DNA of 64,000 nt from Ylistrum balloti. Lineage: Eukaryota. A program made the translations under genes and the position numbers. The stretch spans positions 124,001 through 188,000 of the forward strand of contig NW_026782187.1 in NCBI RefSeq assembly GCF_031769215.1, written 5' to 3'. The notes under the pieces are model-generated. The model saw only the letters and a list, made by a program, of their open reading frames with translations. It did not search any database and was not told the origin of the DNA. Positions 10,583-37,899 of this stretch are shown in pieces; the first letter of the stretch is position 1; each line of letters opens with the position of its first letter.

Positions 10583-11281
10583 ATGTTATCGGCAGGAGGC
10601 AGCAATCTTTGGAGATTACTGGTTCAGATATTCTTTCTCGTTCTTGTCATTAACGATGCCTCAATCACAAGCTCTTTGCCTATTCCAAAGAATGTCGAAC
10701 AAAACGTCACTAATATCACCGATACAACCGTCGAATTACATTCCAATAGAGCAGACCGTTGTATACAATGCATTCTGCCATCAGGCGAAGACTTCCAGCA
10801 TAACGCATTTATCAAGAGGCCACCGGAGACCTACGTAGCGCTGAAAGAAAGCACAGCTGTGTTCGAATGCATTCCCAGTTTATTTAACATCTCAAGTGAT
10901 GATGTCACTGTCACGTGGACAATTCCATTTTCAGTCCCGGTGACGTCGTATGATAAACTACATTCCGAGGATGCAACGGGAGCCTTCATAACTCCAAACA
11001 GCTCAATTTTGATTATGAAAAATGTGCAACCAGAGTTCTCCGGAATTTATCAGTGTGTGGTGGAAACTTCCTCTAGCACTATAATAGCTGAAATGAACTT
11101 GGTCGTTCGAATGTATGTAGTCGACATATATAACTGGCTTATCGCTGGAATTCCTGGGTTTTTACTGATATCCATGTGTGTCGTCATAACTTTCTTTTAT
11201 TGTAGAATAGAAAAAAATCGCAGGGAATTCTACCGAGCACGCCGGCTTCTCAAGGAACAACAGGTTTTATATAAATATTGA
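10583..11281 (+). CDS. Single Ig-domain type I transmembrane protein (232 aa), CDS in one exon
   Basis: Signal peptide (LWRLLVQIFFLVLVI), Ig hallmarks (AVFEC, VTW, LIMKNVQPEFSGIYQC), TM helix WLIAGIPGFLLISMCVVITFFYC, short basic tail. Acceptor AG 5 nt before an ATG in ccaacATG context. Confidence 0.9.
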   Translation: MLSAGGSNLWRLLVQIFFLVLVINDASITSSLPIPKNVEQNVTNITDTTVELHSNRADRCIQCILPSGEDFQHNAFIKRPPETYVALKESTAVFECIPSLFNISSDDVTVTWTIPFSVPVTSYDKLHSEDATGAFITPNSSILIMKNVQPEFSGIYQCVVETSSSTIIAEMNLVVRMYVVDIYNWLIAGIPGFLLISMCVVITFFYCRIEKNRREFYRARRLLKEQQVLYKY

Positions 11282-14570: not shown

Positions 14571-15379
14571 AATTGGAACAACCGCTGCAGTTTATCCCTA
14601 CCGAACATGATACGGAGAATTATTTAAGAGTATTGAACTTCTTTTTTGTTTTCTAATGTTTAGCTTTTAAGAAGTAAAATTTCACAAAAGTACAAATGTA
14701 TATTGATCTTTATTTGTTTTGTTCCTTCAATCAAGATTTTAGCTACAAGAGAATAAAACTTCAATTGATGTAGGAGATTTTATGAAGACCTGAATGAAAC
14801 ATTGACATACAAATCACTCTGGTTAGACAAGGAAGTTAAAAAAAAATGTCTTCCAAGATCCGAGGTGTAACGCCAAACCACATGGCAGCTTACATATATA
14901 TTGCTTTAGAAGTTTCTCCTCCAGGTGGAACGATAACGTCACGTGTAGATGGATTAAATTTATGTTAACAGTGCATTGTCTGCATGTGGAGCAGAAATCG
15001 ACTTCAAAATATATCGTCAATTTATTTGTAGATAGCATATCCTATCCCATGTGTAGCTTAACTTCAGTGTTTGTTGCCATGTCTGTGATGCGAAAATACC
15101 TGTTTATGTCTTACTGAGATGGTACGTATTTTACAAGGTGGTCATGAAACAACCATTGAGAAGCATAAATAAAAACCATTTAGAAAAATAGCATATACAG
15201 TATAAAAATGGTGTCATGTTTTTTAATCTGAATATGAAGAGATAAAACATGGCTGCTGCAACGTTCTTAGCCACGATTCAGACGTCGATTCAGATTCAAA
15301 ATTTAAACCAAATTGACCAGAAACCCTAAGGAACTCGACTTGGTGCTTTTGACAATTTACTTAGGAGTCGATATTGGAT

Positions 15380-15530
15380 CTATCCAGTTGCACAAACACG
15401 TCTGCATTTACAGTACACAGGTACACTAAATATACAGAAATGCCTTTCTTGGGGTCCGTCTTCTTCTTCAGGTTCAACAAGAAGCCAGACGTAGGCTTCT
15501 TCCATTTCGCAATTTCTACAGCTACCTTCT
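15380..15530 (-). CDS. Spaetzle-like cystine-knot gene, last coding exon (EGSCRNCEMEEAYVWLL...FSVPVYCKCRRVCATG*)
   Basis: Acceptor cttctacttatctattgcag at 15531, phase 2; 151 nt = 1 + 50 codons; contains the C-x-C knot end. Confidence 0.9.
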
Positions 15531-15619
15531 CTGCAATAGATAAGTAGAAGTAAGGGTAATGTCATTGTGAGTTTATCAGGCAACGGAAATTTAAAATCCC
15601 AGCGAGAGGTCCTTAGGGC

Positions 15620-16560
15620 CTTATCAATTAACTGGTTTTGCTTTATTTAAACTAAAGGAAAATTATTCTGAAGATTTGTAGGTTAACCCCACCCCCTTTC
15701 TTGGCCCTGCCCCTACCAAATGCAGACAAAAGACTACCAGTAGTATTTAAGATAATGTGCTCTATATCACCTATTGGCCCTCATCCAGGAAAACAACAAC
15801 CGTCTTTACAAATAGACTCCTTTTCACCCAAGAATGCTTCTGAGAATCCTGGCATCCCTAGTGTAGCAACCCTTCCCTTACTGCCCACGGGGCGGTGCTA
15901 CACTGTTTATTCGAAAAGGATGCTTTAGACCAAAGAAGAGCAGAATCCAGGCATTTCTGCAGAAGAACGATTTAAATTATTTGCTTCATTTCCGCTACTG
16001 GGCCCTGCTCTTTGGTGGACGGGGACCAACCATTTATACAAAATTGTTTCTTCTTCAGTTCAAGGATGCTTCTGACTGGAATGGAACAAAATACAAGCTT
16101 TCCTTCAGAAGGATTTTAAAGAATTCTCCTATTGGACCCGTCTCTCCCGCCCAAGGGGGCTGAGGCCCACCGTTTATACAACATTGATTCCCTTTACCTA
16201 ACCATTCTTCATTTGAAATAAGTACACAATAACATTCCTGCAGAAGAAAAATCATTTTAGATAATTCGCCATATTTTCGTTATTGAGCACTTCCCCTCCG
16301 CCCGATGGGACTTGGGCCCACCATTTTTACAAAGATGATTTCCCTTCACCGAAAATGTTTAAGACCAAATTTGGATAGAAACCAAGCATTCCTGCAGATA
16401 AAGAAGTGTTTTCAAGGATTGACACCATTTCCCGGCTCCGCGCCTCATGTCTCAGTGGGCTGTGATCAACCATTTATACAAAATTGATTCCCCTTCAACC
16501 AAAGATGGTTCACAAGAACTTTGGATGCACAGTCGAGATCTATTCACTTGACCTCAAATG
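15620..16560. mobile_element. Mollusc-type dispersed repeat built of degenerate about 130-bp subunits (intron of the Spaetzle-like gene)
   Basis: ccaccgtttatacaa-attgattc and gaccaaatttgg motifs are shared with 37900-38620 and 47900-48600; transposon class not determinable. Confidence 0.6.
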
Positions 16561-17174
16561 CCCTCATATAAAGAATTTCACACCCCTACTTATATCGTAC
16601 ACAGTGTGTAACTGGCCAATTTGCGTCTCTGTCGGCTATAGAGGAATTATCCTCGTCGGCTTTAACATATACAGAAAGAGGAAACCTGTGAGGTATCTAA
16701 AGCTATCCATGATCCCACCACCATCGTCTTTTAATATCATTATCTCATGTTTTAGTTTGCCTGCGACTGCAATACACCCGACGCCAAGTCAACCATACAC
16801 ATATGGCTGCATGGTGCCGAGTTGGACAGAAATCATGGTGCCTTGGGCTCGCACCTGTGTTGTATCAGACCCGACTCTTTCGACTCCGGATGAGGCAATT
16901 CTAACACCACCCACTTCATCCTCCGCATGTTTAAAGGAACAGACCTTGGACCGGAATGAGGCGACATATACGTTTTAACCCCCTTCCAAACAGAGATCCT
17001 CTATCTCGTACATGTAATATATTGATGAGGCAGTAATCTTTCATTTCACACATTACTGTAAATGTATTTGTTTATGGTGGATCCATATAGGAACTAATCA
17101 AGAATATATATAAATACTTGTAAATACTTTAAAAAAATCACATACCTTGAATTACTGGGGGTTTCATATATGAA

Positions 17175-17960
17175 GGTCATCAGAAAAGTATCTAGGGGGA
17201 GATATATCATATATATGGGGGGATACATATATGATGCTCATTAGAAAGTATCTAGGGGGAGGTTTATCATAGATACATGGGGACACATCAGTTGTTATGC
17301 TGAAAGGATTCAAAGCTTCCAGGATGATGCATCGTGACGAGTTCATTTCTAAAAAATTGCAAATGGGAACTAACTAGTCTTTGGTCCTTCACATACAATG
17401 TGAAGGGAGGTAAGTGTGTAACTCATAGTATGGGTATTAGTGAGTTTTACTTCTACTTTTAAGGTAAAAGAACACACAATACAGGATTATTATATGTCCC
17501 CCTCCCCCTCCCAATATCTAAGTAAATTACCACTATTCTGATAGCCGTCATAAATGTAACCCCCCTCCCAATATTTAAGTAGATTATCTCTATTCTGATA
17601 GCCATCATAAATGTAAACCTCCCCTCCCAATATTTAAGTAAATCACCATTATTCTGATAGCTCCCCTCCCAATATATCAGATAATTGTCCCCTAGATACT
17701 ATTCTGTTACCTATCATCAATGTATGCCCCTAATATATCTAGATAATTGTCCCCTAGTAAATTACTATTCTGTTACCTATCATTAATGTATGCCCCTAAT
17801 ATATCAGATAATTGTCCCCTAGATACTATTCTGTTACCTATCATCAATGTATGCCCCTAATATATCAGATAATTGTCCCCTAGATACTATTCTGTTACCT
17901 ATCATTAATGTATGCCCCTAATATATCAGATAATTGTCCCCTAGATACTATTCTGTTACC
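17175..17960. repeat. 61-bp tandem array (17500-17960) with inverted degenerate copies (17175-17290)
   Basis: Unit cccctaatatatcagataattgtcccctagatactattctgttacctatcatcaatgtatg; the left block contains its reverse complement agaa-agtatctagggg twice. Confidence 0.8.
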
Positions 17961-18740
17961 TATCATTAATGTATCCCTTCTTTCACCATTGCTATTAAGT
18001 AATGTAGAGTTACAGGATAACATTGTTTCTGTTTGATCTATATATCAATCCCCTGAAGAGCTGCCAAACAGCAAGATTCATTGATACTCCAGATCAGTCT
18101 TCTAACATTCCCAACTCCCATCCACTGCCCCTTCATGCATATCTATTAAATGTGTATTATTGTATTATTGTGACCTTTATATTCAAAAATGGTTAATTGT
18201 TCCTGCACAGGTAAATGATTTGTTCAGTTAAGCAATCTATCATTGCCTGCAATATTGACTATATAAAGACAATCAGACAAGCCCTGTCCCACCAGAGTAC
18301 TATCCACCTGACCACGTGTAATCTGTTAACTGGATAAAGTTAAAGTATTGATTTCAGGGAGGGATAGAAATACTATAGGGGATACTTTTATGATGGAAGA
18401 AAAAGTATCCGGGTACTTTTATGATAAGGGATACAAATATGATATGACACCGGTCTGTCTTGCACCAATTTGTCCACCGGCATCTACCTTACCTACGTCA
18501 CCTCAGAGGTCAATAAGGTCACAGACAACCCTTCTTTCTGCAAACTTGAATAAGATTCTAGAATTTTAATTCTATGTATTTCGTTGTGTAACTTACCCTA
18601 GAAGACATACTGTTAACAAACATAGATAAAAAAAGTCCCTTGGATTATAATGATATGTGATAGAAATGACCAGAATAATGATATGTGATAGAAATGACCA
18701 GAATCGTTCATTTCCCAACCAACATTGTTTCTGTGCTCAC

Positions 18741-18854
18741 CCGCATGGCTCAGCTTTCGAAATGGCTTGATAGGTATTGTTGTATTTGACTATAGTTCTC
18801 ATGATTTGGTAGATATCCATCATACGGCCTTCCACCGGATAAAATCTAAATCGT
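18741..18854 (-). CDS. Spaetzle-like gene, middle coding exon (RFRFYPVEGRMMDIYQIMRTIVKYNNTYQAISKAEPC)
   Basis: Acceptor tttgtgtatttcag at 18855, donor gg|gtgagc at 18740; 114 nt, phase 2-2, open and in frame with both neighbouring exons. Confidence 0.9.
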
Positions 18855-19149
18855 CTGAAATACACAAAGTTATTTTTCATTTAAAATCATGTAAATGCTT
18901 ATTAGATGGTTCAACTTATGACTGATTCACGAATACTTGCAGTAAAGAGGATACATTCCTAAAATAGGCCATGTTTCACTATTTGTGTAATTTTATGTGA
19001 GCCGTTTTGGGACTTTATTTAACTTATCAAAAATGAAACCTTTATAGTGGAATAAATATTAGAAGTATAATCACAACATCTAAAAGTAATGCCAAAACAT
19101 TGACAGATCAAACTAAAATCCTTGACTTTAAACAAAGAAGAATAATTTA

Positions 19150-19270
19150 CTGATGCGATTTGAAGCTGGACATCTTTGATGCTTGTTAGTTTGACTGGTG
19201 GTTCCATTATTGTTTACCTCGTTCTCATTGGGAACGTGACATCTCATTCTTGGATTGACCAATGAAGTTA
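19150..19270 (+). mobile_element. Penelope-like 3' fragment related to 7170-7260
   Basis: tttgatgcttgttagtttg...ttgtttacctcgttctcattgggaacgtgacat aligns with tttgatgcgtgttagtttg...ttgtataccttgttctcatttaaatagtgacat. Confidence 0.45.
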
Positions 19271-19274
19271 AGTT

Positions 19275-22170
19275 CTGAGCTAAGTTCGGGATCAGGATTG
19301 GATGAGCTAAGATTGCATGTAGAGCCAGGATCAGGATAGGGTGTAGGTAGAGTTAAGATCAGGATTAGGTGTGGGTAGAGGTAAGATAAGGATAGGGTAT
19401 AGGTAGAGGTAAGATCAGGATAGGGTGTGGGTAGAGGTAAGATCAGGATTAGGTGTGGGTAGAGGTAAGATCAGGATTAGGTGTGGGTAGAGGTAAGATA
19501 AGGATCAGGATAGGGTGTAGGTAAAGATCAGGATTAGGTGTGGGTAGAGGTAAGATAAGGATAGGGTGTAAATAGAGGTAAAATCAGGATTAGGTGTCTG
19601 TAGAGGTAAGATAAGGATAGGGTATAGGTAGAGGTAAGATCAGGATCAGGATAGGGTGTAGGTAGAGGTAAGATCGGAATCAGGATAGGTAGAGGTAAGA
19701 TCGGGATCAGGATAGGGTGTAGGTAGAGGTAAGATCAGGATCAGGATAGGTAGAGGTAAGATCGGGATCAGGATAGGGTGTAGGTAGAGGTAAGATCGGG
19801 ATCAGGATAGGGTGTAGGTAGAGGTAAGATCAGGATCAGGATAGGATGTAGGTAGAGGTAAGATCAGGATCAGGATAGGTAGAGGTAAGATCGGGATCAG
19901 GATAGGGTGTAGGTAGAGGTATCGGGATCAGGATAGGGTGTAGGTAGAGGTAAAGATCAGGATCAGGATAGAGGATGTAGGTAGAGGTAAGATCAGGATA
20001 GGTAGAGGTAAGATCGGGATTGGGCGTAGGTAGAGGTAAGATCGGGATCAGGATAGGGTGTAGGTAGAGGTAAGATCAGGATCAGGATAGGGTGTAGGTA
20101 GAGGTAAGATCAGGATCAGGATAGGATGTAGGTAGAGGTAAGATCAGGATCAGGATCAGGATAGGGTGTAGGTAGAGGTAAGATCAGGATTAGGATAGGG
20201 TGTAGGTAGAGGTAAGATCAGGATATGGTGTAGGTAGAGGTAAGATCGGGATCAGGATAGGGTGTAGGTAGAGGTAAGATCGGGATCAGGATAGGGTGTA
20301 GGTAGAGGTAAGATCGGGATAGGGCGTAGCTAGAGGTAAGATCGGGATCAGGATAGGGTGTAGGTAGAGGTAAGATCGGGATCAGGATAGGATGTAGGTA
20401 GAGGTAAGATCGGGATAGGGCGTAGGTAGAGGTAAGATCGGGATCAGGATAGGTTTAAGGTAGAGTTAAAATCGAGATCAGGATAGGATGTAGGTAGAGG
20501 TAAGATCGGGATAAGGATAGGTAGGTAGAGGTAAGAGGATCAGGGATAAGAGATCAGGATAGGTAGGTAGAGGTAAGATCAGGATATAGGATGTAGGTAG
20601 AGGTAAGATCGGGATAAGGCGTAGGTAGAGGTAAGATCGGGATCAGGATAGGTTTAAGGTAGAGTTAAAATCGAGATCAGGATAGGATGTAGGTAGAGGT
20701 AAGATCGGGATAGGGTGTAGGTAGAGGTAAGATCGGAATAGGGCGTAGGTAGAGGTAGGATCGGAATAGGGTGTAGGTAGAGGTAAGATCGGGATCAGGA
20801 TAGGGCGTAGATAGAGGTAAGATCGGGATAGGTGTAGGTAGAGGTAAGATCAGGATAGGTGTGGGTAGAGGTAAGATCGGGATCAGCATAAGGTGTAGGT
20901 AGAGGTAAGATCAGGATAGAGTGTAGGTAGAGGTAAGATCAGGATAATGCGTAGATAGAGGTAAGATCGGAATAGGGTGTAGGTAGAGGTGAGATCGGGA
21001 TCAAGATAGGGTGTAGGTAGAGGTAAGATCAGGATCAAGATAGGATGTAGGTAGAGGTAAGATCAGGATCAGGATAGGTAGAGGTAAGATCGGGATCAGG
21101 ATAGGGTGTAGGTAGAGGTAAGATCGGGATCAGGATAGGGTGTAGGTAGAGGTAAGATCAGGATCAGGATAGGTAGAGGTAAGATGGGGATCAGGATAGG
21201 GTATAGGTAGAGGTAAGATCAGGATCAGGATAGGGTGTAGGTAGAGGTAAGATCAGGATCAGGATAGGTAGAGGTAAGATCGGGATCAGGATAGGGTATA
21301 GGTAGAGGTAAGATCAGGATAGGGTATAGGTAGAGGTAAGATCAGGATCAGGATAGGGTGTAGGTAGAGGTAAGATCAGGATCAGGATAGGGTGTAGGTA
21401 GAGGTAAGATCAGGATCAGGATAGGGTGTAGGTAGAGGTAAGATCAGGATCAGGATAGGGTATAGGTAGAGGTAAGATCTGGATAGGGTGTAGGTAGAGG
21501 TAAGATCGGAATAGGGCGTAGGTAGAGGTAGGATCGGGATCAGGATAGGTTTAAGGTAGAGGTAAGATCGGGATCAGGATAGGATGCAGGTAGAGGTAAG
21601 ATCGGGATCAGGATAGGGTATAGGTAGAGGTAAGATCAGGATCAGGATAGGGTGTAGGTAGAGGTAAGATCAGGATTAGGATAGGGTGTAGGTAGAGGTA
21701 AGATCAGGATCAGGATAGGGTGTAGGTAGAGGTAAGATCAGGATAGGGCGTAGATAGAGGTAAGATCGGAATAGGGTGTAGGTAGAGGTAAGATCGGGAT
21801 CAAGATAGGGCGTAGATAGAGGTAAGATCGGGATAGGGTGTAGGTAGAGGTAAGATCAGGATTAGGTGTGGGTAGAGGTAAGATCGGGATCAGCATAAGG
21901 TGTAGGTAGAGGTAAGATCAGGATAGAGTGTAGGTAGAGGTAAGATCAGGATAGGGCGTAGATAGAGGTAAGATCGGAATAGGGTGTAGGTAGAGGTGAG
22001 ATCGGGATCAAGATAGGGTGTAGGTAGAGGTAAGATCAGGATCAAGATAAGGTGTAGGAAGAGGTAAGATCGGGATAGGGTGTAGGTAGAGGTAAGATCA
22101 GGATCAGGATAGGGTGTAGGTAGAGGTAAGATCGGGATAGGGTGTAGGTAGAGGTAAGATCGGGGTAGGG
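19275..22170. repeat. 2.9-kb purine-rich satellite, 34-bp main unit taggtagaggtaagatcaggatcaggatagggtg with 28-bp variants
   Basis: Period 34 at 21361/21395; built of about 6-bp subunits; lies in an intron of the Spaetzle-like gene. Confidence 0.95.
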
Positions 22171-22199
22171 TGTTGGATATATAAACTTTTTTTACAACA

Positions 22200-22372
22200 A
22201 TTGTGAAACAAGTAGTTTTTACTTATACTAGTTACTTTTGTTCGCCCTGATGTAAGCGCACGAGGGGAAACGTGAGTATCCGTGGAAAAACCCACGTGGT
22301 CGTGCAGGGAAATCGAACCCCGGACAGCTAGGTGAAAGGCGAATGCGTTACCACTGCGTCACCCGACCACTC
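22200..22372 (-). mobile_element. tRNA-derived SINE with V-type central domain
   Basis: Minus strand has A-box tgacgcagtgg, ctttcac (tRNA-Glu-like loop), B-box ggttcgatttccc, then gtgggtttttccacggatactcacgtttcccc. Confidence 0.8.
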
Positions 22373-22530
22373 AAAGTGATGGTAAAGCTAAGATATCATG
22401 TAAAGTTAGATTGTGGATTTAACAAAGACTTGCATTAAATTGATTTGGGATTTTAGCTAAAAAGGGGTAATTTTGAGTTATGTCAACAAAATGCATGCAA
22501 ACTTTACACTAAACATGGAGGACTACTCAC

Positions 22531-23111
22531 GATGGACAACAGTCATCACTGTCTTTGTAATTTGCTACTCTATAGTTACTAGACAATTTCTGGCGTGTAT
22601 GGTTATGCATTACACGGTCCATTTCTGTTATTTCATTCTTTGTGTGAAATAGACCGGGATATTTTGTCAGGACTGACTCTGTATTCAAAACACTTTGTCT
22701 AGTTGGATGGTGTTGCGAGTGGTCTGTGTTCATTTTTTCCATGTAAATGGCCTTGTGTCTTTCTTCTTTGGTATCATGTCCACTCTCCGCGCCATTAGTG
22801 CGTCCCTTGTCATCGACAGTTGTCACACCATAATCAGGGTCACTTTTGTAATCACCTGGTTGTACTGATTCAGCGTCATTATCTGGCAATGAAGTGACAC
22901 GGTCACGACCTAACAATGCTGTGTCAACATTCGGTTTTGCCTTCTCGATTTCACGATTTGAATTTAAAATTTCACCGACACCTGGACACCAAGGAAGAAC
23001 AACGTTGCATGACGCCAGTTGAGGATTGATTTCAGTTATGTTGCATTCCGCATACATCTCACATGTAGCAATAATCAAAGATGGCAGTGCTAGAAAAATG
23101 AGCGCCATCAT
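22531..23111 (-). CDS. Spaetzle-like gene, first coding exon (signal peptide, prodomain, start of knot DDCCPS)
   Basis: Acceptor ttttttctccacag at 23115, ATG at 23111 (MMALIFLALPSLIIATC), donor tc|gtgagt at 22530; 581 nt, ends in phase 2. Candidate upstream UTR donor aaag|gtaatg near 24308. Confidence 0.88.
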
Positions 23112-24464
23112 CTCCTGTGGAGAAAAAAGATCTATATTACACATCTGAGATACCAACTGGGAGCGTATCTTGAAAACCTCTTTCTCCCGACTACACCCAC
23201 ACAAAAATACAGACACAAACAAACAAAAACGTGAAGAGTATGTTTCGGCATGATTAGCAATAAGGTATATCTGTGATAACTATCAAAACAGGTGAAAACG
23301 CTAGGAACCGAAATGTACTCGTCAGATTTTAGAGTATCATATTTAACGTAGCAGTATATTTTTCCTTGTTTAAAATAGAGGGGCACTTTACACATACTGC
23401 AGATTACCACTATCTGTTACCTTTTTAATAAGAAAGAATTTTTTTATTCATTTTGTGTTTGGTTATTTCTGTTGATTAACTAGTAAAAGACGTTTCGTCA
23501 CTAATGACAAATACCCCTTATACCGCAATACTTTGGGGAATATTATATCTTATTGTCATTTGCTGATAAATGAAGTTGGTTCTGCGTTTTGAATCCATTA
23601 CTGAATATGATGCAACAGTAAGGATTTTCAGCTTAACTAGCACTTTAATTGTATCGAACCATTCAGGTTTGGTTTCCAGTTTTCAGATTTTTTTTCATTG
23701 GTAAAGTAGATCTTCTAGTTCTAAATGTAAATAAATAAAACCTTTTCTGCATGTCGTCATTGTTGATAAAATTACATCTGACCCACGGCGGCTAATCCCA
23801 TGAAACCGACTAGAATTTCATGAAATATGAGAAGGGCATCTTGTTATCGTATCGACTAAGTTCACATTAAGAAATCTCTTTATTTTATACTATTATTACC
23901 AACAATAGTTTGGCATTGTCTCAAAACTACATTTGCCTTCTCGTAATGTTGAAATGGGAGGTCTATTGTGGGGAAAACATATTAAGTAGAACCCCGTAGC
24001 GTGTACATGAATAGATAACTCTTCTCAGCGTTTCAATTTTATCGGTTCAACAAAGATCCCGAAGCAGGAGGCTTCTAGTTCTCACTGAAGCCATGGGACA
24101 GATTTCTGTATTTAACTACATTTCAAGGTTTTCAAACCTTTACCATATTCTGTCCTCGATAATAGCACTAACTAAAACCATGAAATGCTCTACAATCGCT
24201 CTCTTTAATGTCTGAACAAATGCTCAAACGGTTTTAAGGTGTTCAAAACTTCGTCAGTACAATAATGATAATTAAAAGATATTAAAAGACAATGAAATAT
24301 CTCATTACCTTTATCTGAATAAACACATTTGTTACAAGTCTTAAGATAAACAGAGTTTTTGGCATCTTTTTTTTTAATATATTTATATATCGGTTAAGAT
24401 CTAACTACAACACTTAATGTGCAACTTTTGTTTTCATTTCATGATGCAACAATTAAGACCCTTG

Positions 24465-27987: not shown

Positions 27988-28812
27988 ATGCCTGGATCTA
28001 GGACCAGTGTGGGTAGCGGGAGGACGGGCAGCAAAGGGAGGACTCTGGATATTGTTAATGAACCCACTGCAGAGAAGGACAGGGTAGATGTCCTTTTTGA
28101 GATGATAGCTACCCTTGTGACCAAATCGGACTTGGACAAGATGATGGATAGAAAACTAGAGCGATTAAGAGAGGATATTAGGGAGGAGAACCGTGTGCTA
28201 GTGGAGCAGCTAGAAGGACGAATTTTCGACCTCGAAAAAGACAACGATGTCTTACGAGATAAAGTGGAAAAGCTAGAAGACCATGTGAGGGAGTCCGAGA
28301 AATTCAACGCTTCTCTTGATTATAAGATGAACGACCTGGAGCAGCAGGGGAGAAAAAATTCTATTCGCATTGTTGGATTGGAGGATACCAACGAACGGGA
28401 ATCTGTAGACGAATGTGTCTATAAAGTTGTGACTTTTGTGCGGAATTCCCTCGAAGTCGACTTAGAGGAAAAAGACATAGACATTGCCCATAGGTTGGGA
28501 AAGTACAGCAGAGATAAGCCACGTACCATAATTTGTAAGTTGACACATAGGAGGAAAAAGACAGAGATCCTCAAAAGCCGCCGGAAGCTAAGGGGGAAGA
28601 GGCAAATTGTGTTTGAAGACCTGACAAGAAGAAACCAAGAGATCCTGAAAGAGGCTTACAGACTTAAGAGCGTCAAACATACTTATAGTGTGGATGGAAA
28701 GCTTTTTGTAGTTTTAGCTAACGATAAGAAACGTAGACTACGTTATGATACAGTGTTAACGGACCAATACCTGGCTGAGGATAACAACTTCAGGACGGGA
28801 CTTTTCGACTGA
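27988..28812 (+). CDS. LINE ORF1 (coiled coil plus RRM/CTD, L1 ORF1p-like), intact, 274 aa
   Basis: Heptad region, then LEQQGRKNSIRIVGL, DIDIAHRLG, PRTIICKL and EDLT motifs. Confidence 0.9.
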   Translation: MPGSRTSVGSGRTGSKGRTLDIVNEPTAEKDRVDVLFEMIATLVTKSDLDKMMDRKLERLREDIREENRVLVEQLEGRIFDLEKDNDVLRDKVEKLEDHVRESEKFNASLDYKMNDLEQQGRKNSIRIVGLEDTNERESVDECVYKVVTFVRNSLEVDLEEKDIDIAHRLGKYSRDKPRTIICKLTHRRKKTEILKSRRKLRGKRQIVFEDLTRRNQEILKEAYRLKSVKHTYSVDGKLFVVLANDKKRRLRYDTVLTDQYLAEDNNFRTGLFD

Positions 28813-29467
28813 AAGGTCTCATATCTCTGGACACAGTGAACACTTAAATGTAGATATCGAATGATGTGATCGATAGTGGACTTGGGTACGACTCAGTACC
28901 ACCAGAGAGGGACTTTCTCTGGTTTATCGATCAATCTTTTATGTTAATTTCTTTTGTGTTTTTTTCAGTGTGTTCATTAAGAGTGCTATTCTTTTTCTTC
29001 TTTTCTTTTATTGTGGATGGTAAACAGTGGAAAAAACATGTAGATCGGTAAGTCTTTTTTTCCTTCGTTTAAAATTGTATTGTTATTGAATTGAAATGAA
29101 ATTCTTTTATCTGCGCGACTTAGGGTATTTTTCTCTCTTTTTGAAAAAAATAATGAAGTTAGCAGAATTTTGGTGTTTGGAAATATTTATAAAATTATTT
29201 CTGTAACGACTTACAGCGTATCCAGAAAATGGTAACGCTGTGTCGTTTTTCTATTTATATTATAGTATACTACTTCCGGTGTACTTCCAATTCCGTTCGC
29301 CGGCATGGTACTGCTAGAGGTGTGAGTGCGTAAGTCGACAGTTGTACTTGTTTTTGATCTTTTTTCGGTATGGTTTTTTATCTCTCATCTTTCCTTTTCT
29401 CTTCTTCTTTACTTTTGCTCTCTATGACTGGGCTAAATATTATACTCCAGAACGCTAAAGATGTAAC

Positions 29468-32400
29468 ATGATGGAGGGCGTATCCATATTGTCTGCGAAC
29501 TGTCAGGGTCTTGGGGACAGTATTAAAAGAAAAGACGTTATGTCTTATCTCAGAGCTAAGAAATGTTGTATTTACTCCCTGCAAGACACACACTTTACTG
29601 AAGAGAATCAAAACATTATTAGAAATGAATGGGGGTTTGAGTGCTACTTTAATTCCTTTAGATCTAATTCAAGAGGGTTTGCAATTTTGTTGAATAATAA
29701 TTTTGAAATTACAGTTAATAAAGAAAAGAAAGATTTGTTCGGAAATTTCTTGGCTCTTGATATTACACTGGAAGGTGCTAAGATTACATTAATTACAGTG
29801 TATGGTCCAAATACTGACTCGCCTAGCTTCTATGATATGGTAGCTGATACTATTGAGGATTTTGACAATGCTAAATACATTATATGTGGTGATTTTAACC
29901 TAGTTATAAGTCCTGACCTAGACTATGATAGTAGCTATAAGACAACAAATAATCAAAAAGCAAGGGAGAAAGTTTTAGAAATTATTGAAAGTCACTCTTT
30001 AGTCGATATTTATAGGAACTGCATTCAGATAGAAGATATACGTGGAGGAGGAAGAACCCATTGAAACAGGCTAGATTAGATTTTTTTTTGATATCAGATA
30101 ATTTACTATCCAGTGTAACTAGTGCAACTATTGAACCAGGATACAGGTTAGATCACTCATTTCCTTTACTTAATTTGAAATTTAATGAATTTAAACGAGG
30201 AAAGGGTCTGTGGAAATTTAATTCCTCTTTGCTGTATGACGAGGTGTATCTTGATTTGGTTAAAAATGTTATTCTACAGACAAAAATGCAGTATTGTCTA
30301 CCTGTTTACAATAAGGATAATATAATCAATATTCCAGATACTGAAATTCAATTTTCAATTGATGATCAACTTTTTTTGAAACATTGTTAATGGAAATTAG
30401 GGGAAAGAGCATATCCTACTCATCCTTTAAAAAGAAACAGCAAAATAGAAATGAAAACATTATAAGAAATGAGATACAAAACTTGGAGGACCAAGAGCAG
30501 GTTGATATTGAAGAATTAGAACGTAAGAAAAAAGAATTAGAAAATATTAGAGTTAACAAGATTAAAGGCAATGTTATAAGATCTAGGGCACAATGGCATG
30601 AAGAGGGGGAAAAACCAACTAAATATTTTTTAAATTTAGAAAATAGGAATTTTATCTCTAAAATAATACCAAAGATAGAGAAAGAAAATGTCATAATATC
30701 ACAGCAGGAAGATATTCTTGAGGAGGTATGTTCTTTTTATGAAAAACTATATGATGACAGATATGAGACAGATGATGTTGATTTGATTGAACTTTTGGAT
30801 GGATGTGATGTTCCAACATTAAAAAATAATGAGGCTGAAAATTTAGAAGGGCTAATTACGATAGAGGAAGCAACAAAAAATTTGAAAAACATGAAGAATA
30901 ACAAAAGTCCAGGTACAGATGGTTTTACTGTTGAATTTTTTAAATGATTTTGGAAACAGCTAGGAATTTTTATTGTCAGATCTATTAACTATGGATATAG
31001 TAAAGGTTTGTTATCGATAACACAAAGACAAGGTGTCATTACTTGTATTCCCAAGGGTGATAAGCCCAGACAGTTTTTAAAAAATTGGCGACCTATAACA
31101 TTATTAAATATAGTTTATAAGATAGCCTCAGGATGCATAGCATGTAGGATTAGAACAGTTTTAGATAAGTTAATTTGTGAGGATCAAACAGGATTTCTTT
31201 CAGGTCACTATATTGGAGAAAATATTAGACTTTGATATTATGCAATATGCAGACGAAGATATATCCCAGGTATGTTATTAATGTTAGATTTTGAGAAAGC
31301 GTTTGACTCAGTATCATGGAAATTTATTGATAATGTTTTGAATTATTTTAATTTTGGTTCTGATATTCGAAATTGGGTTAGATTGTTTCACACTAACATT
31401 ACTGCAACTGTAAATCAGGGGGGGAACTTATCTTCTTTTGTAAATATCAAAAGAGGCTGTCGTCAAGGCGACCCAATTGCACCATACCTTTTCATACTAT
31501 GTGTTGAAATACTAGGAATTAGACTTAGAAATAACAATAAGATTAAGGGTATCATATGAATAACTGTCCAATTCTCCTTTCTCAGTATGCAGATGACACT
31601 TCACTTATTCTAGATGGTTCTGAAATGTCTTTAAAAGAATCTATTGTCGAATTGAAATATTTTGCGAAGATATCTGGTTTAAATCTCAATGTTGATAAAA
31701 CTCAAGTTATTTGGATAGGGAGCAAAAGTTACAGTGAAGATACATTTTTACCTGAATTAGGCTTACAATGGGGAAAAAATAAATTTAAACTGCTTGGAAT
31801 AGATTTTAGTGTTAATTTACATGAGATCCCAAAATTAAATTTTGATAAAAAGCTAATTAAACTTAAAATGCTTGTTAAAACTTGGAGTAGACGAGCACTT
31901 ACACCAATTGGTAAAATAGTCTTGATAAAATCTCTTCTTCTTTCACAATTTAACCATTTATTTATTTCCTTACCTAACCCTGATGAAAAGTTTTTACAAG
32001 ATCTCAATACAGTTTTATTCAACTTTTTGTGGAATAGTAAGGTGGATAAAATAAAGAGAGATATTATCACGCAGAATTATTATGAGGGGGGTCTGAAAAT
32101 GGTTAATGTTAGGGTATTTATAGATTCTTTAAAATTAGGTTGGATAAGAAGGTTATATCAAAAAACATCAAAGTGGCAACATATTTTCAAAACATTCTCA
32201 GACCCACACAAATTATTTATATGTGGCGGTGCCTATATTCAAGAACGTAAAAATAAATGCAAAAATAAATTTTGGAAGGATGTGTTTAAAGCCTGGGAAA
32301 GATTTAATGATTCAGATACAGTAAAGGAAAGAAAGAAAAACTCCATATTGGCATTGCCATTATGGTATAACAGAGATTTACTTATTGGGAAAAAGACTAT

Positions 32401-33277
32401 TTTTTATAAATTGTGGTACAAGAGGGGAGTAACAATAATTTATGATTTGATAAAAGATATTGATACATGCTCGTTCTACACTCTTCAAGAATTTAATGAG
32501 ATTTATCAAGTTAATACAAACTTTCTTCAATATAATGGTGTGATCTCTGCTATTAAATCATATGTAACAAAGATAGGCTATAGAAGGCAGTTAATCTTTC
32601 ACCCTATCATCTCAAGTAACATATTTTTTTTCCTGAAAAATACAAAATGGACTAAGGATCTATATAATTTTATGGTTAAAAAATGTACTGTATCTATAGG
32701 TAGGAAGAAGTGGGAAGACATATTTGAAGATATTGAGTTGACCTGGTCTGATATTTATAAAACTCCATTTAAGGTTACAAAGAATACAAAGCTACAGTGG
32801 TTTCAATACAGAATAGTGCAACATATTTTAAAAACAAATACATATTTGTTTAAAGCTGGATTAGCAAATAGTCCTATCTGTCCTCTCTGCAACTTGGAGA
32901 GAGAGAGACAATAATTCATACTTTGTGGGAATGTCGAGAAACTCAGAAATTTTTGGTTAATGTTGAAACTCTTCTTGATGCACTATTGATTCCATTTTCT
33001 TTTACAAGAAAAGCTTTATTTTTGGGGTAACTTCAGATTATGACAATGCTATGGGAAACTCAGTAGATAATGAAATTCTGATCATGATTAAGTTATATAT
33101 ATATATAAATCAAGATGTATACATAAAATCTTAAATCCAAATATTCTGCTAAACTCAATCAAAGAGTATTACACATTTCAAAAATATATTGCTAACAGCA
33201 AAGGTGATCTTGCACAGCAGAATTTAGAAAATAAATGGAGAAAATGGAGAAGATTATTAGACTTAAGTGATATTTAA
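29468..33277 (+). pseudogene. LINE ORF2 (APE endonuclease, reverse transcriptase, C-terminal zinc motif), disrupted
   Basis: SANCQGL, LQDTH, GDFN, KSPGTDG, NWRPITLLN, LDFEKAFDSV, GCRQGDP, QYADD, CPLC..HTLWEC. Frameshifts near 30014, 30375, 31232, 31262, 31555, 32905 and 33010, plus an in-frame TGA at 30945. Confidence 0.92.
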
Positions 33278-34080: not shown

Positions 34081-36619
34081 TGGGAAAGTGTGTTGCACAT
34101 GTAGATGTCAATATCTGTAAAAATTATGAAACTTTTCAAAAATAAAAGAAATGAAAAAAAAAAAAATCTATTTGTTTGTTTTTGATATTTATATCTATAA
34201 ACGTACTGCAATAAAACAGACTCCCTTTTTTAAAGCCATACTATTTTGTTTACAAGTAAACTTCTATTGTATTGGGGTGTAGAGTGCCACCGTTCTGACC
34301 ACTATATCACAAATGATTTCCAGTAATTGACGTAAAATTAGAACTTATAAATCATACACCGTACTTCCATAGACTCGATTCTAAAATTGTAACCAACATT
34401 TTCCTTTTTTTTATTGGTCTTTTTTCTATAAATATTATAACCACTTAAAAAACGGAAATAAAGAATGTCGCGTCGATCGTTGTGTGTTTTATCGGTTGAA
34501 GGCCCTAATGACCTTTTAAGTGTTAACGGGCCGTTAAGAATGTCATAATAATCGTCAAATTTTTAAAAATCAAGCTGTTTTTCTTGTAAATCAATAAAAA
34601 TGTAAATAAATTCATTGTTTGTAACAGGATATAAACAGATGAGTAAACAGAAGAGAAATGGTGAATCAAGATATAAGTTAAGGAGATGACCACGCTGGCG
34701 GAGATGAAGCGTATCTGGTTAGTACTGACGATGGTATAGCCAAGACACGGTTAACAAACCCAACTCTGTGGGAATCACAGATATACAAGAGGCCCAATGG
34801 GCCTGCATCGTTCAACTGGTGTCCAACATTCATCAAAAAATAGAATTGGTTTCCATCATAAATCACTGGCATTCAGTGGGCTCATCCAATCAATGTTTAC
34901 TAGTTTCCACAACAATAGCTTCTAATACTTAATTTTTACAATGACGTCTCCTTGATTATAGCTAAACTTTTATTTTTTGCTCACAATATGTCAGGCTTTC
35001 AACTTTCCACAAAAGATCTAGCTTCTCGGACTTTTACAGGGTTTGAAAATTTGGCCCCTGTTACATTGAATATAGTTCAGGATAATTTCTTTTTGGCAAA
35101 TTTTGTAACATGTATCACAGAGACCTTGCTACCAGCCAAATATTATGCTTCTGGGTCTTTTGGTGTGTCAGAAGAAGTTATTTTGAGGTTACAACAAATT
35201 TGACCCCTATGACATTGAATAAGCGTCAAAATAATTTATATTTACAAAGTAATATCAACATTTAAATGTAAACAGTTGATTCATATTCATATATTAAACA
35301 GGCTTACGTCCGCTATTACGGCCTTTCAGCCTTGCATCAGAAAAGATAAAGTTGACAATTAGGTGTCTGTACACAGCTTACATGAGCAACTAAATATAAA
35401 TATACATATATATATATGGTGTTCCATATTTGTCTATTATAAAATCTCTCTCTCCCTCTATCTCTCTAAATTCCCCCCCCCCCCTTCTCTCTCTCCCCCC
35501 TACCCCGCTCTCTCTCTCTCTTCTTGTATCATTTTATGTGCATCTGCTATTTATATATAGAAACTTAATTCATTTCAACTTATCACTCTTGTTGTAAGCA
35601 CGCGAGGGGTCTTACTATGGGGAAATCAGAGAAAACACATATCAGTTCAGGGAACCGCAGCCTATATATGTACATGTATACATATATCTAAAAACAGTCT
35701 TAAAATAGGCATGAATGAGACTATACTGTACATATATGTAAATAAGCTAGTGAAAGATACGTTATCACTTAAAAGTTATAATGTAGGTGACAACAAAGAA
35801 AATAAAAGGTAAAGGTTATTGCTTTCAAAACTTTTTATTTCATAGATTTGTAATGAAATCATGAAAAGTTCACGGAAACGAATTACATTCCGTATGTTCA
35901 GTTCGCTTCAAAGTAACTATGAGTTCTCCCAATTATTGTTGATATTGAGACAATACAAACTGCAGGTCGAAGGTCAATTAACTACGAGTTGTTTCCGTAA
36001 TCTTTTATCATGTGACATTAAAACCAGTATTTAACATTTATATTACTTCCCTGTATACGACTTCAAGTGAAAGTGTCCACTGTCATACTGAAGTGTTTGT
36101 CAATAATTCGTCGGGATATCGTCAGCGGTGTGAGGCATCTAAGGGAAGCAACTCTGAAAAGGTTGACAAAATGAATGCTGAGACGCATTTACCCCAAACA
36201 TCAATGAATGTAATACTTTGCAATATTGAATGATTCTAAATCAACTTTGAATACAGTTAATTCATTTTGTCGCGATAAAATATCAGATTTTACTGTAAAT
36301 ATATGCGATATTTTCGCTATCTTCACGGAGTGAACATAACAATTTCAGATACAATATTGTATCTTCACTCATTTTTATCAATATTTACAGTACTTTTCTG
36401 TGAAATATCCATTCTAACAGAGTGTATTTAGGACTTGGAGAACGACATCTTGGGTAGAAACTCTAAGTGTAGGAGGACCAATGTAATATATGTGATATAT
36501 ATATATATATATCTACGATATTGTTCATGTAGAGAGGTGAATCAAAACTGACATCGATGAAAGGTTTTAAAAGATAATTGTTCATTTAAAAAAGTCATTG
36601 CTTCTTTATCAATAAAGAA

Positions 36620-36864
36620 GTATTCCATCTCGTGGAGTGGAAATTGTTTTACAATGGAAATTAATGTCCGTTGTGTACGTAGACCAACCCGGGGATGGAG
36701 ACATTTTTCACAAGGGAATTGATGTCCGTTGTGTAAGTATACCAATTCGGGGATGGAGACATTTTTCACAAGGGAATTGATGTCCATTGTGTACGTATAC
36801 CAACTCGGGGATGGAGACATTTTTCACAAGGGAATTGATGTCCGTTGTGTACGTAGACCAACTC
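36620..36864. repeat. 58-bp satellite, short array (about 3.5 units) in copy A
   Basis: Same unit and same right-hand junction (gtagaccaactcacatct) as the long array. Confidence 0.9.
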
Positions 36865-37899
36865 ACATCTAATAATGCTTACATGGAAAGGTACCAATTT
36901 TTGCCAGTCTTATCGTAACACTGTTATAGACAAAAACTAATAATTTTGTAGCAAAAAGCTTGACGTTAGTTTCATGATATAAAAATTGTCCGTTCGTCGG
37001 TCGTGAAGTTTGTCCTGAGATCTCTCAAAGCTGTCAGCGATCTCTTTCAAACAAGGTAGACTTAAATATACCACTATAATGTTGATATGAAGCTGTCTTG
37101 AACAACGTTTGGATTCGACTGTATTTGAGATTACACAACCACAGTTACTGCCCTCTTTTTGATAATTTCATAATCTTATTATTTTTCACTGGGATCTCTG
37201 TTTTCAACTGATCTCTATTTCATGTGTTTATAACTATTGTTCTGGACGGCGACTTCACTGAACAGTTCCTGGAGAAATTGACGTTTGTTTTCCCAATATT
37301 TTTGTACGGAAATTTCTTCCAGTTTTAACTAATTTCTTTGAAGCACGGTACATTGTGTAACCACGATATGAAACTGTTATCCTGAATAGCAGTTTGATAC
37401 AATTTTCGAATGACCTATAGTGTGTTTCAGCATTTAAATTTTGTCCAGACATCCCCTCCCTAAGTTTCTGACCTATCTCTTGGTACATTCTGTAAATATT
37501 AACGTCAATACATATATATATATAATTATGTTGCTTTCGTTCAAATTCGATAGTGCCTATTACAATGAAATTAGATTTTGTTTTCTCAGTGAAATGCTTT
37601 CATTTACATATTCATTAGAATACAATAATGGATTTGTCTGTGGCATAGTACACTTGTTCCTTGCGTAATTTTGCATCATTGACCTCGCGGTAGAGATAAA
37701 TATTACAATGGTATTGAATCAGACTAAGAAAAAAGGATGAACTGTGAAACATGAGGGCTTTCGTTTTCATCTTTAGATGTTTTATCACTTAAAAAAGGAC
37801 GTGTACAGCTAACCTGGCTATGTTCGGCTGAAATAGCTTCATTAGAATTAAAGAAAAAGGAAATCTAAATATTCATGTAAACAACACAAAACATATGTT

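What the first reader, a model, noticed from the sequence alone, without database searches (positions are those of the whole stretch)
15380..23111. Hidden Spaetzle-like (Toll-ligand/neurotrophin-type) cystine-knot gene assembled from three exons
Exons 23111-22531, 18854-18741 and 15530-15380 join with canonical GT-AG phase-2 introns into 281 aa: a signal peptide, a low-complexity prodomain, then ...SSNYR-VANYKDSDDCCPSRFRFYPVEGRMMDIYQIMRTIVKYNNTYQAISKAEPCGEGSCRNCEMEEAYVWLLVEPEEEDGPQERHFCIFSVPVYCKCRRVCATG. The pattern C-x-S..YP..G....IV....YQAI...C...C..C......F.VP..CKC parallels Drosophila Spaetzle C-106 as I recall it, including a possible Arg-Val activation site (NYR|VAN versus SSR|VGG). Nine cysteines (an odd number) would allow a disulfide-linked dimer. 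Molluscs have many TLRs but poorly defined endogenous ligands, so this is a candidate cytokine for a protease-Spz-Toll axis. Function is inference.
Basis: partly seen in the sequence, partly recalled or inferred. Interest (0 to 1): 0.85.

Follow-up and report, generated by a model that had tools for sequence, protein, structure and literature searches.

The report
Possible scallop cystine-knot cytokine gene
Three stretches of scallop DNA can be spliced into a 281-residue secreted, cysteine-rich protein whose tail looks weakly like a cystine-knot cytokine, but it matches no defined family (Spaetzle included), has no detectable relatives and no RNA evidence, so it is only a candidate.

Summary
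Exons 23111-22531, 18854-18741 and 15530-15380 (minus strand) join through two phase-2 GT-AG introns into a 281-aa frame. It has a signal-peptide-like start, a hydrophilic middle and nine Cys in the last 91 residues.

Exon 1 is far beyond chance. Exons 2 and 3 are not, on splice geometry alone. No RNA run holds the locus, and no protein in the large collections resembles exon 1 or exon 3.

The joined domain hits no Pfam family (Spaetzle, NGF, IL17 and PDGF included) and no PDB sequence.

Weak leads converge on a cystine-knot cytokine:
- Language-model features of exon 3 rank Spaetzle clusters first.
- Exon 3 alone folds as a long beta hairpin ending in CxC, and its nearest structures are IL-17A, VEGF and PlGF.
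- Alignment with Drosophila Spaetzle gives z 4.8.

That similarity does not extend to Aedes Spaetzle. A Spaetzle profile scores the domain no higher than human NGF. A mollusc IL-17 profile rejects it. Exon 2 looks helical rather than beta.

Verdict: an unannotated candidate cystine-knot-like secreted protein, family unassigned; a Toll-ligand role is speculation.

The parts
22531..23111 (-). Proposed exon 1 (coding part): residues 1-193 plus two bases of codon 194
   Evidence: The ATG is at 23111 and donor GTGAGT follows 22531. It is part of a 231-codon stop-free frame, 22527-23222. There is no Pfam family, no relative among 5.8 billion proteins and no recognised family by Atlas features.
23067..23111 (-). 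Signal-peptide-like N-terminus (residues 1-15, hydrophobic core ALIFLALPSLIIA, small residue at -1)
   Evidence: Read from the translation. The cleavage position is my inference from the -3/-1 rule; no predictor was run.
22569..23066 (-). Hydrophilic middle region (residues 16-181).
   Evidence: Translation. It has no similarity to Spaetzle (z -0.3). Cleavage is untested.
22531..22568 (-). Start of the Cys-rich domain in exon 1 (residues 182-193, with Cys191 and Cys192, motif CCPS)
   Evidence: It aligns with the first Cys of Spaetzle C-106.
18855..22530 (-). Proposed intron 1 (phase 2), mostly a 2.8-kb minisatellite at 19319-22173 (period 28/34/62)
18741..18854 (-). Proposed exon 2 (residues 194-232 in part; 37 whole codons, ending in Cys231)
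   Evidence: Acceptor TTTCAG and donor GTGAGC. It is one of only two splice-compatible internal candidates in 12-22.5 kb. It aligns with the matching half of Spaetzle at p 0.016. Folded alone by AlphaFold2, it gives a small hairpin plus a helix. A second DNA data set carries two nonsynonymous differences (K to E, Y to F) with the frame intact.
15531..18740 (-). Proposed intron 2 (phase 2), with 57-61-bp tandem arrays and high-copy repeats
15380..15530 (-). Proposed exon 3 (last 49 residues plus stop TAG at 15382-15380). It holds six Cys, including CKC at 272-274.
   Evidence: Acceptor TTGCAG. Folded alone by AlphaFold2, it gives a long beta hairpin with strands at exon residues 7-18 and 30-42, pLDDT 75. 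Atlas features rank Spaetzle clusters first. The nearest structures are IL-17A, VEGF and PlGF, none significant. It is identical in the second DNA data set.
15021..15227 (-). Candidate polyadenylation signals: ATTAAA 152 nt and AATAAA 353 nt after the stop
   Evidence: Such hexamers are common in A+T-rich DNA, so this is weak evidence.

Best explanation
This is most likely an unannotated, lineage-restricted scallop gene for a secreted pre-pro-protein.

Shown:
- A long open exon 1 with a signal-peptide-like start.
- Two downstream pieces that join in frame through good GT-AG sites.
- A Cys-rich last 91 residues with the layout CC, 38 residues, C, 4, C, 2, C, 24, C, 7, C, 1, C, 3, C.

Inferred:
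- The tail forms a cystine-knot-cytokine-like domain. In it, C231-x4-C236 and C272-x-C274 would make the ring. Cys191 or Cys192 paired with C239 would thread it. Residues 240-271 would form the long beta-hairpin finger.
- The odd ninth Cys could link two chains.
- The domain would be released from the hydrophilic middle region and act as an extracellular ligand.

Its family is unassigned. It resembles Spaetzle more than NGF, IL-17 or VEGF in pairwise comparison. It is not a detectable member of any of these families, and its receptor is unknown.
For: Gene-like features:
- The frame and splice sites are as described.
- The exon 1 frame is far longer than chance would give.
- Exons 2 and 3 are the only Cys-rich, G+C-richer, splice-compatible candidates in the region.
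- They lie in single-copy DNA and are intact in a second DNA data set.

Exon 3 alone:
- Atlas features rank two Spaetzle clusters first (0.83, 0.81). An NGF/Spaetzle cluster, a Spaetzle/IL17 cluster and an IL-17B cluster follow, and all ten best family hits share one clan.
- AlphaFold2 gives a 12+13-residue beta hairpin ending at the CxC, pLDDT 75.
- Most of the top 50 Foldseek rows are VEGF, PlGF, IL-17A or IL-25.
- The best of 48,161 chains by VIA-align is IL-17A, with 46 residues aligned at 3.0 A.

Joined domain against D. melanogaster Spaetzle C-106 (the sequence used was confirmed identical to PDB 4bv4 and 3e07):
- Smith-Waterman score 51, z 4.8, p about 0.001, collinear across all three exons.
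- Each exon alone aligns with the matching half, at p 0.016 and 0.029.
- The reversed sequence and the prodomain give z about 0.
- Human NGF, IL-17A and VEGF-A give z -1.3 to 0.1.
Against: - There is no RNA evidence at all.
- No relative of exon 1 was found among 5.8 billion proteins. For exon 3, the search of 1.84 billion representatives gave only a spurious bacterial repeat protein. A conserved cytokine should have annotated orthologues in other scallops.
- The joined domain hits no Pfam family at E<=10 and nothing relevant in PDB sequences.
- The Spaetzle similarity shrinks with other Spaetzle sequences. In profile form it is only 4-5 bits.
- Exon 2 alone is predicted as a hairpin plus a 21-residue helix, pLDDT about 90. 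Its hydrophobic periodicity is helical: moment 2.07 at 100 degrees against 0.51 at 170 degrees. The matching Spaetzle and NGF segments are beta-like.
- The whole-domain fold could not be predicted.
- Splice-compatible short exons arise by chance at appreciable rates.
Confidence: 0.45

Rival explanations
1. The gene model is partly an artefact. Exon 1 is (or was) coding, but exon 2, exon 3 or both are chance open stretches that the reader picked to complete the frame. The real transcript, if any, ends or continues differently. One example is exon 1 joined directly to exon 3, which is also in frame because both introns are phase 2.
For: - No RNA run is available.
- No protein in the large collections contains exon 1 or exon 3.
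- Internal candidates of the same splice quality occur at 0.07 per kb and terminal ones at 0.9 per kb in this window.
- Both differences seen in exon 2 in a second DNA data set are nonsynonymous.
- Atlas recognition of exon 2 is low (1310) with no usable hit.
Against: - Exons 2 and 3 are the only Cys-rich candidates in the region, and the other candidates translate to featureless sequence.
- Six Cys in 49 aa occurs in only 2.5% of stop-free chunks.
- Both exons align collinearly with the matching halves of Spaetzle, at p 0.016 and 0.029.
- Exon 3 alone folds as a confident hairpin with cystine-knot cytokines as its nearest neighbours.
- The Cys at the ends of exons 1 and 2 fall where a knot needs them.
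Confidence: 0.3
2. This is a true, very divergent member of the Spaetzle family. A clip-domain-type protease cleaves it after Arg181. Its disulfide-linked dimer then activates one of the many scallop Toll-like receptors.
For: - Spaetzle gives the best pairwise similarity among the families tested: z 4.8 against D. melanogaster and z 2.5-2.8 against D. miranda and D. biarmipes.
- The Spaetzle profile score is exceeded by only 1.1-2.4% of shuffles.
- hhalign gives P 0.0098, on the F-x-x-P-x-x-CKC motif alone.
- Spaetzle clusters rank first by Atlas features of exon 3.
- The C1-C2 spacing is 38 residues, against 36 in Spaetzle.
- Arg-Val lies 9-10 residues before the first Cys, as in Spaetzle.
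- Aedes Spaetzle-1C also has a C-x2-C after the second knot Cys.
Against: - PF16077 is not matched at E<=10.
- The Drosophila profile gives Aedes Spaetzle 57 bits and this domain 5.0. NGF, a different family, scores 4.0-8.3.
- There is no collinear similarity to Aedes Spaetzle-1C.
- The conserved Trp and the C-x-Q of Spaetzle are absent.
- Exon 2 has helical periodicity where Spaetzle has strands.
- Nothing bears on cleavage or receptor binding.
Confidence: 0.12
3. It is a very divergent member of another cystine-knot cytokine family that is expanded in bivalves. The leading candidate is IL-17, whose invertebrate members keep all six knot Cys; PDGF/VEGF is the alternative. It would then signal through that family's receptor rather than a TLR.
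For: - The spacing C-x4-C ... C-x-C and a Cys-Pro at the first knot Cys are those of invertebrate IL-17 domains (sequences in the S1 Dataset of PMC4517768). That paper states that invertebrate IL-17s form the third knot disulfide.
- IL-17A is the best structural neighbour of the exon 3 hairpin.
- VEGF, PlGF and IL-17A fill the Foldseek list.
- IL17 clusters appear lower in the Atlas list.
Against: - Pfam IL17 and PDGF are not matched.
- A profile of six mollusc IL-17 domains scores human IL-17A at 42 bits and this domain at -3.0 bits, a score that 76% of shuffles reach.
- Pairwise z against six mollusc IL-17 domains is -1.0 to 1.6. Against human IL-17A and VEGF-A it is about 0.
- The C1-C2 segment is about 16 residues longer than in IL-17.
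Confidence: 0.07

Closest known systems
Spaetzle (Pfam PF16077; Drosophila Spaetzle C-106, PDB 3e07 / 4bv4)
   Same: - It is a secreted precursor with the Cys-rich domain at the very C-terminus.
- An Arg-Val pair lies 9-10 residues before the first Cys.
- About 37 residues separate the first and second knot Cys.
- It shares the motifs Y-P, I-V, Y-x-Q-A-I, E-x-C and F-x-x-P-x-x-C-K-C, and both end in T-G.
- It has an odd Cys count.
- Pairwise z is 4.8.
   Different: - There is no PF16077 match.
- The profile score is only 4-5 bits, against 57 for a mosquito Spaetzle.
- The loop between the third and fourth knot Cys is 2 residues instead of 13.
- The conserved Trp is missing.
- It has extra Cys at 264 and 278.
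- The middle segment looks helical.
- It shows no similarity to Aedes Spaetzle-1C.
Invertebrate IL-17 (Pfam PF06083; mollusc IL-17 domains of PMC4517768)
   Same: - It shares Cys-Pro at the first knot Cys, the C-x4-C and C-x-C spacing, and a Cys just before the long hairpin.
- IL-17A is the nearest solved structure to the exon 3 hairpin.
- The IL-17 family is large and divergent in bivalves.
   Different: - It is rejected by Pfam IL17 and by a mollusc IL-17 profile that detects human IL-17A at 42 bits.
- It has a longer first segment and a much shorter loop before the hairpin.
Neurotrophins / NGF (Pfam PF00243) and PDGF/VEGF (PF00341)
   Same: They share the general cystine-knot growth-factor layout: a first Cys, a ring-forming pair, a long hairpin and a terminal C-x-C. 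VEGF and PlGF head the Foldseek list for exon 3.
   Different: There is no Pfam match. Pairwise z is -1.3 for NGF and -0.1 for VEGF-A. The ring spacing also differs: x9 in NGF, x3 in VEGF and x4 here.
Paphia undulata Spaetzle homolog (Yu et al. 2015, cited in PMC7773633)
   Same: It is the only mollusc Spaetzle homolog reported, according to PMC7773633. Like this candidate, its link to TLR signalling is not demonstrated.
   Different: It was found as an expressed cDNA, whereas this candidate has no RNA support.

Membership tests
Spaetzle (PF16077) | Sequence match to the Pfam Spaetzle profile at or above its gathering score | tested here: not met
   The joined 93-aa domain gives 0 Pfam families at E<=10. 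The three exon pieces searched apart also give none.
Spaetzle (PF16077) | Recognisable similarity to solved Spaetzle cystine-knot domains | tested here: inconclusive
   - Against D. melanogaster C-106: z 4.8, p about 0.001.
- Against D. miranda and D. biarmipes: z 2.5-2.8.
- Against Aedes Spaetzle-1C: z 1.6, not collinear.
- Drosophila profile: 5.0 bits, reached by 1.1% of shuffles. The Aedes control scores 57 bits and human NGF 4.0-8.3 bits.
- The PDB sequence search with the domain finds no Spaetzle.
Spaetzle (PF16077) | Six knot Cys plus one for the dimer, in Spaetzle spacing | tested here: inconclusive
   Spacing here is CC-38-C-4-C-2-C-32-C-1-C, with extra Cys at 264 and 278. D. melanogaster has C-36-C-6-C-13-C-29-CC-1-C, and Aedes has C-36-C-8-C-2-C-5-C-28-CC-1-C. 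The outline fits, but the middle loops do not.
Spaetzle (PF16077) | All-beta NGF-like cystine-knot fold of the whole domain | not testable with these tools
Folded apart, exon 3 is a long beta hairpin, while exon 2 is a hairpin plus helix with helical periodicity.
Spaetzle (PF16077) | Activation by serine-protease cleavage after Arg, and binding to a Toll receptor | not testable with these tools
   Only the letters Arg181-Val182 are present. There is no dibasic furin-type site next to the domain.
IL-17 (PF06083) | Sequence match to an IL-17 profile | tested here: not met
   There is no Pfam match. A profile of six mollusc IL-17 domains gives -3.0 bits, a score that 76% of shuffles reach. The same profile gives human IL-17A 42.2 bits.
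IL-17 (PF06083) | C-x4-C and C-x-C pairs flanking a long hairpin, with Cys-Pro at the first knot position in invertebrates | tested here: met
   C231-x4-C236, C272-x-C274 and C192-P193 are present. They were compared with the sequences in the supplement of PMC4517768. Spacing alone does not define the family.
NGF / neurotrophin (PF00243) | Sequence match to the NGF profile or to solved NGF | tested here: not met
   There is no Pfam match. Pairwise z is -1.3 against human NGF, whose sequence was confirmed against PDB 1sg1.
PDGF/VEGF (PF00341) | Sequence match to the PDGF profile or to solved VEGF | tested here: not met
   There is no Pfam match. Pairwise z is -0.1 against VEGF-A. The Foldseek rows for the exon 3 hairpin have E about 1.
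Cystine-knot cytokine superfamily (Pfam clan of NGF, Spaetzle, IL17, PDGF, TGF-beta) | Long two-stranded finger ending in C-x-C, plus a ring-forming Cys pair and a threading disulfide | tested here: inconclusive
   The finger and C-x-C are modelled for exon 3 alone at pLDDT 75. Its nearest neighbours are superfamily members but are not significant. The ring and the threading disulfide cannot be checked without a whole-domain model.

The most novel reading that the evidence does not exclude
The locus encodes a real, expressed founder of a scallop-lineage family of cystine-knot cytokines. The family would descend from the Spaetzle/neurotrophin stock but have diverged beyond profile detection. 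It would carry a compressed knot (C-x4-C-x2-C) and a helical insert in the first finger. It would be activated by cleavage after a single Arg and serve as an endogenous ligand for one of the expanded molluscan TLRs.
Probability: 0.08. Interest if true: 0.8.

Novelty: new variant of a known kind. Interest (0 to 1): 0.35.

Why it matters
Bivalves have very many Toll-like receptors, and whether any of them is activated by an endogenous cytokine, as in insects, is open. PMC7773633 states that outside arthropods a Spaetzle homolog has been described only in one clam, and without a demonstrated link to TLR signalling.

A verified scallop cystine-knot ligand that sequence searches cannot see would show that such ligands can hide from annotation. 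It would also give a concrete protein to test against TLR ectodomains.

As it stands, the evidence supports only a candidate gene. Its value is as a cheap target for RT-PCR and for a whole-domain structure prediction.

Tried and rejected
1. Junction reads. The look-up of sequencing runs returned only one run, of DNA type. Laying it showed contiguous genomic contigs, no joints at the exon borders and no RNA.
2. Relatives of exon 1 among 5.8 billion proteins: none.
3. Exon 3 against 1.84 billion representatives: one hit, P0001. It is a bacterial repeat protein matched on an acidic-loop motif and is spurious.
4. Pfam on the separate pieces and on the joined domain: nothing.
5. PDB sequences with the pieces and with the joined domain: only chance rows (CD276, ClpP, ribosomal protein L36).
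I did not send it to any other remote tool afterwards.
7. Atlas features of exon 2 and of exon 1: no usable family.
8. Paralogues in the window by tblastn: none.
9. Look-alikes in earlier notes by sequence: none.
10. Fetching diverse Spaetzle proteins: the word-based search returned only Drosophila orthologues. The Spaetzle profile is therefore narrow, and I added Aedes Spaetzle-1C from a printed PDB alignment.
11. IL-17 as the better label: rejected by a mollusc IL-17 profile with a working positive control.
12. Hammerhead ribozymes in the intron minisatellite, as noted elsewhere in this genome: no Rfam family anywhere in the window.
13. The full 281-aa protein was never typed into a tool. 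Exact look-ups of the whole product (listing of cluster members, the look-up of encoding contigs) were therefore left out.
Full report
**What is in the sequence**

On the minus strand an ATG at 23111 opens a frame that runs to 22531, where a GTGAGT donor follows. A TTTCAG acceptor precedes 18854, and that piece ends at 18741 before GTGAGC. A TTGCAG acceptor precedes 15530, and the frame closes with TAG at 15382-15380. Joined, the pieces give 846 nt, or 281 aa. Both introns split a codon after its second base.

The product has three regions:
- A hydrophobic signal-peptide-like start (residues 1-15).
- A hydrophilic stretch with four Cys near its beginning.
- A last part with nine Cys, at 191, 192, 231, 236, 239, 264, 272, 274 and 278.

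**Is it more than chance?**

Exon 1 sits in a 231-codon stop-free frame, which A+T-rich DNA does not give by chance. Exons 2 and 3 have only 37 and 49 whole codons.

I counted candidates across the window with equally good splice signals and the required phase. Internal candidates occur at 0.07 per kb and terminal ones at 0.9 per kb. Between 12 and 22.5 kb there is one other internal and two other terminal candidates. Geometry alone is therefore weak evidence.

Content helps:
- The alternatives translate to featureless sequence.
- Only 2.5% of stop-free 49-aa chunks in the window hold six or more Cys.
- The exons have 40-43% G+C, against 28-39% in their flanks.
- In a DNA run of the same species they lie in single-copy DNA between high-copy intronic repeats.

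That run's contigs carry exon 3 unchanged. In exon 2 they carry two nonsynonymous differences, K to E and Y to F, with the frame intact.

**Expression and annotation**

No public RNA run holds the stretch. The one run found is genomic, so the junctions remain untested. Exon 1 has no relative among 5.8 billion clustered proteins. Exon 3 finds only a spurious bacterial repeat protein among 1.84 billion representatives.

The collection does contain NCBI and UniRef eukaryotic proteins. The gene is therefore unannotated here and has no annotated close relative. That counts mildly against a conserved cytokine.

**Family tests**

The pieces searched apart, and the joined 93-aa domain (alignment A1), match no Pfam family at E<=10. 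That includes Spaetzle, NGF, IL17 and PDGF. PDB sequences give nothing relevant.

I then made targeted comparisons with reference sequences:
- D. melanogaster Spaetzle C-106, human NGF, IL-17A and VEGF-A were each typed and then confirmed identical to PDB chains.
- Aedes Spaetzle-1C was copied from a printed PDB alignment.
- Six mollusc IL-17 domains were copied from the supplement of PMC4517768.

Against D. melanogaster Spaetzle the domain gives a collinear Smith-Waterman alignment across all three exons: score 51, z 4.8, p about 0.001. Each exon alone aligns with the matching half, at p 0.016 and 0.029. The reversed sequence and the prodomain give nothing.

The signal weakens with other Spaetzle sequences:
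- z is 2.5-2.8 with two other Drosophila species.
- It disappears with Aedes, at z 1.6 in a non-collinear alignment.
- A profile of 15 Drosophila Spaetzle domains scores the domain at 5.0 bits, which 1.1% of shuffles reach. The same profile scores Aedes Spaetzle at 57 bits and human NGF at 4.0 bits.
- With Aedes added to the profile, the domain scores 3.9 bits and NGF 8.3.
- hhalign keeps only the F-x-x-P-x-x-CKC motif, at P 0.0098.

NGF, IL-17A and VEGF-A give z near zero. The six mollusc IL-17 domains give z -1.0 to 1.6. A mollusc IL-17 profile detects human IL-17A at 42 bits but scores this domain at -3.0.

So IL-17 membership is rejected. Spaetzle membership is not met. What remains is a residual resemblance to Spaetzle of about the size that NGF shows to Spaetzle.

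**Fold evidence**

I did not send it elsewhere. The pieces were folded apart.

Exon 3 gives a long beta hairpin that ends at the C-x-C (strands at exon residues 7-18 and 30-42, pLDDT 75). None of the following is significant by the tools' own standards, but all point to the same superfamily:
- Foldseek finds nothing significant, yet most of its top 50 rows are VEGF, PlGF, IL-17A or IL-25.
- Language-model features of exon 3 rank two Spaetzle clusters first (0.83, 0.81), then an NGF/Spaetzle cluster, a Spaetzle/IL17 cluster and an IL-17B cluster.

Exon 2 points the other way. Folded alone, it is predicted as a small hairpin followed by a 21-residue helix at pLDDT about 90. The hydrophobic moment of DIYQIMRTIVKY is 2.07 at 100 degrees against 0.51 at 170 degrees. 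The matching segments of Spaetzle and NGF are beta-like. An isolated peptide is a poor guide, but this is evidence against a canonical all-beta first finger.

**Architecture and likely mechanism (inference)**

The layout is CC-38-C-4-C-2-C-32-C-1-C, with two extra Cys. It can make a growth-factor knot:
- 231-272 and 236-274 would close a ring.
- 191 or 192 paired with 239 would thread it.
- Residues 240-271 would form the second finger.
- One unpaired Cys would be left for a dimer.

The C-x4-C spacing and the Cys-Pro are those of invertebrate IL-17s, which keep the third knot disulfide (PMC4517768). The C1-C2 distance and several motifs are those of Spaetzle.

The most likely working model is a secreted pro-protein that releases a dimeric cystine-knot-like ligand. 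Its receptor is unknown.

**Novelty**

PMC7773633 states that outside arthropods a Spaetzle homolog has been described only in the clam Paphia undulata, without a demonstrated role in TLR signalling. This candidate fails every family profile, so if it is real it is a divergent variant of the cystine-knot cytokine kind rather than a new member of Spaetzle.

An earlier follow-up note identifies the genome as a scallop. I did not test either.

**Limits**

- There is no RNA and no whole-domain model.
- There are no orthologues, so no conservation or selection test was possible.
- The Spaetzle profile is narrow (Drosophila plus one mosquito).
- The comparison family was chosen after the sequence was seen.

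I put about 0.6 on the model being a real gene of roughly this structure. I put about 0.45 on the cystine-knot-like secreted ligand reading, and about 0.1 on a true Spaetzle-type Toll ligand.

Noticed in passing
window 19319-22173: A 2.8-kb minisatellite (nested periods 28/34/62, about 45 copies of the 62-nt unit, 72-76% matches) fills most of proposed intron 1. On the gene's strand it is pyrimidine-rich. No Rfam family matches it.
   Followed up: partly
window 169-2129: A 44-bp minisatellite of 45 copies at 90% matches, C/T-rich on the + strand. It explains the strong negative GC skew of the first 4 kb and the two long TTG-started frames at 68-2159.
   Followed up: partly
window 17153-17974 and 16355-16551, 18325-18521, 19113-19300: Tandem arrays with 57-61-bp units, together with segments whose contig depth in the DNA run is 130 to over 1000 against about 10 for the flanks. 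These are high-copy repeats inside the two introns.
   Followed up: no
window 34400-38300 versus 40800-48300: A segmental duplication at 96-98% identity, with copies spaced 6.4 kb and 10.0 kb apart. A 58-bp satellite (43270-46540, also at 36529-36886) is expanded in one copy.
   Followed up: no
window 27988-32914 (+): A run of open frames with weak bZIP-like, endonuclease/exonuclease/phosphatase and zf-RVT matches. It looks like a decayed LINE-type retrotransposon.
   Followed up: no
window 62357-62932 and 63257-63712 (-): Two open frames with Mucin2_WxxW domains (E 1e-14 and 2e-9). They are probably exons of a secreted WxxW-repeat gene at the window's end.
   Followed up: no
window 10583-11281 (+): An open frame with a weak immunoglobulin-domain match (Ig_3, E 8e-5, below the gathering score), about 4 kb beyond the 3' end of the candidate gene on the other strand.
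   Followed up: no
window 23112-23146 (-): Directly before the ATG there is a pyrimidine tract and CAG that looks like a 3' splice site. That suggests an untranslated first exon further upstream. An in-frame ATG 33 nt upstream (23144) would add 11 residues if that site is not used.
   Followed up: no
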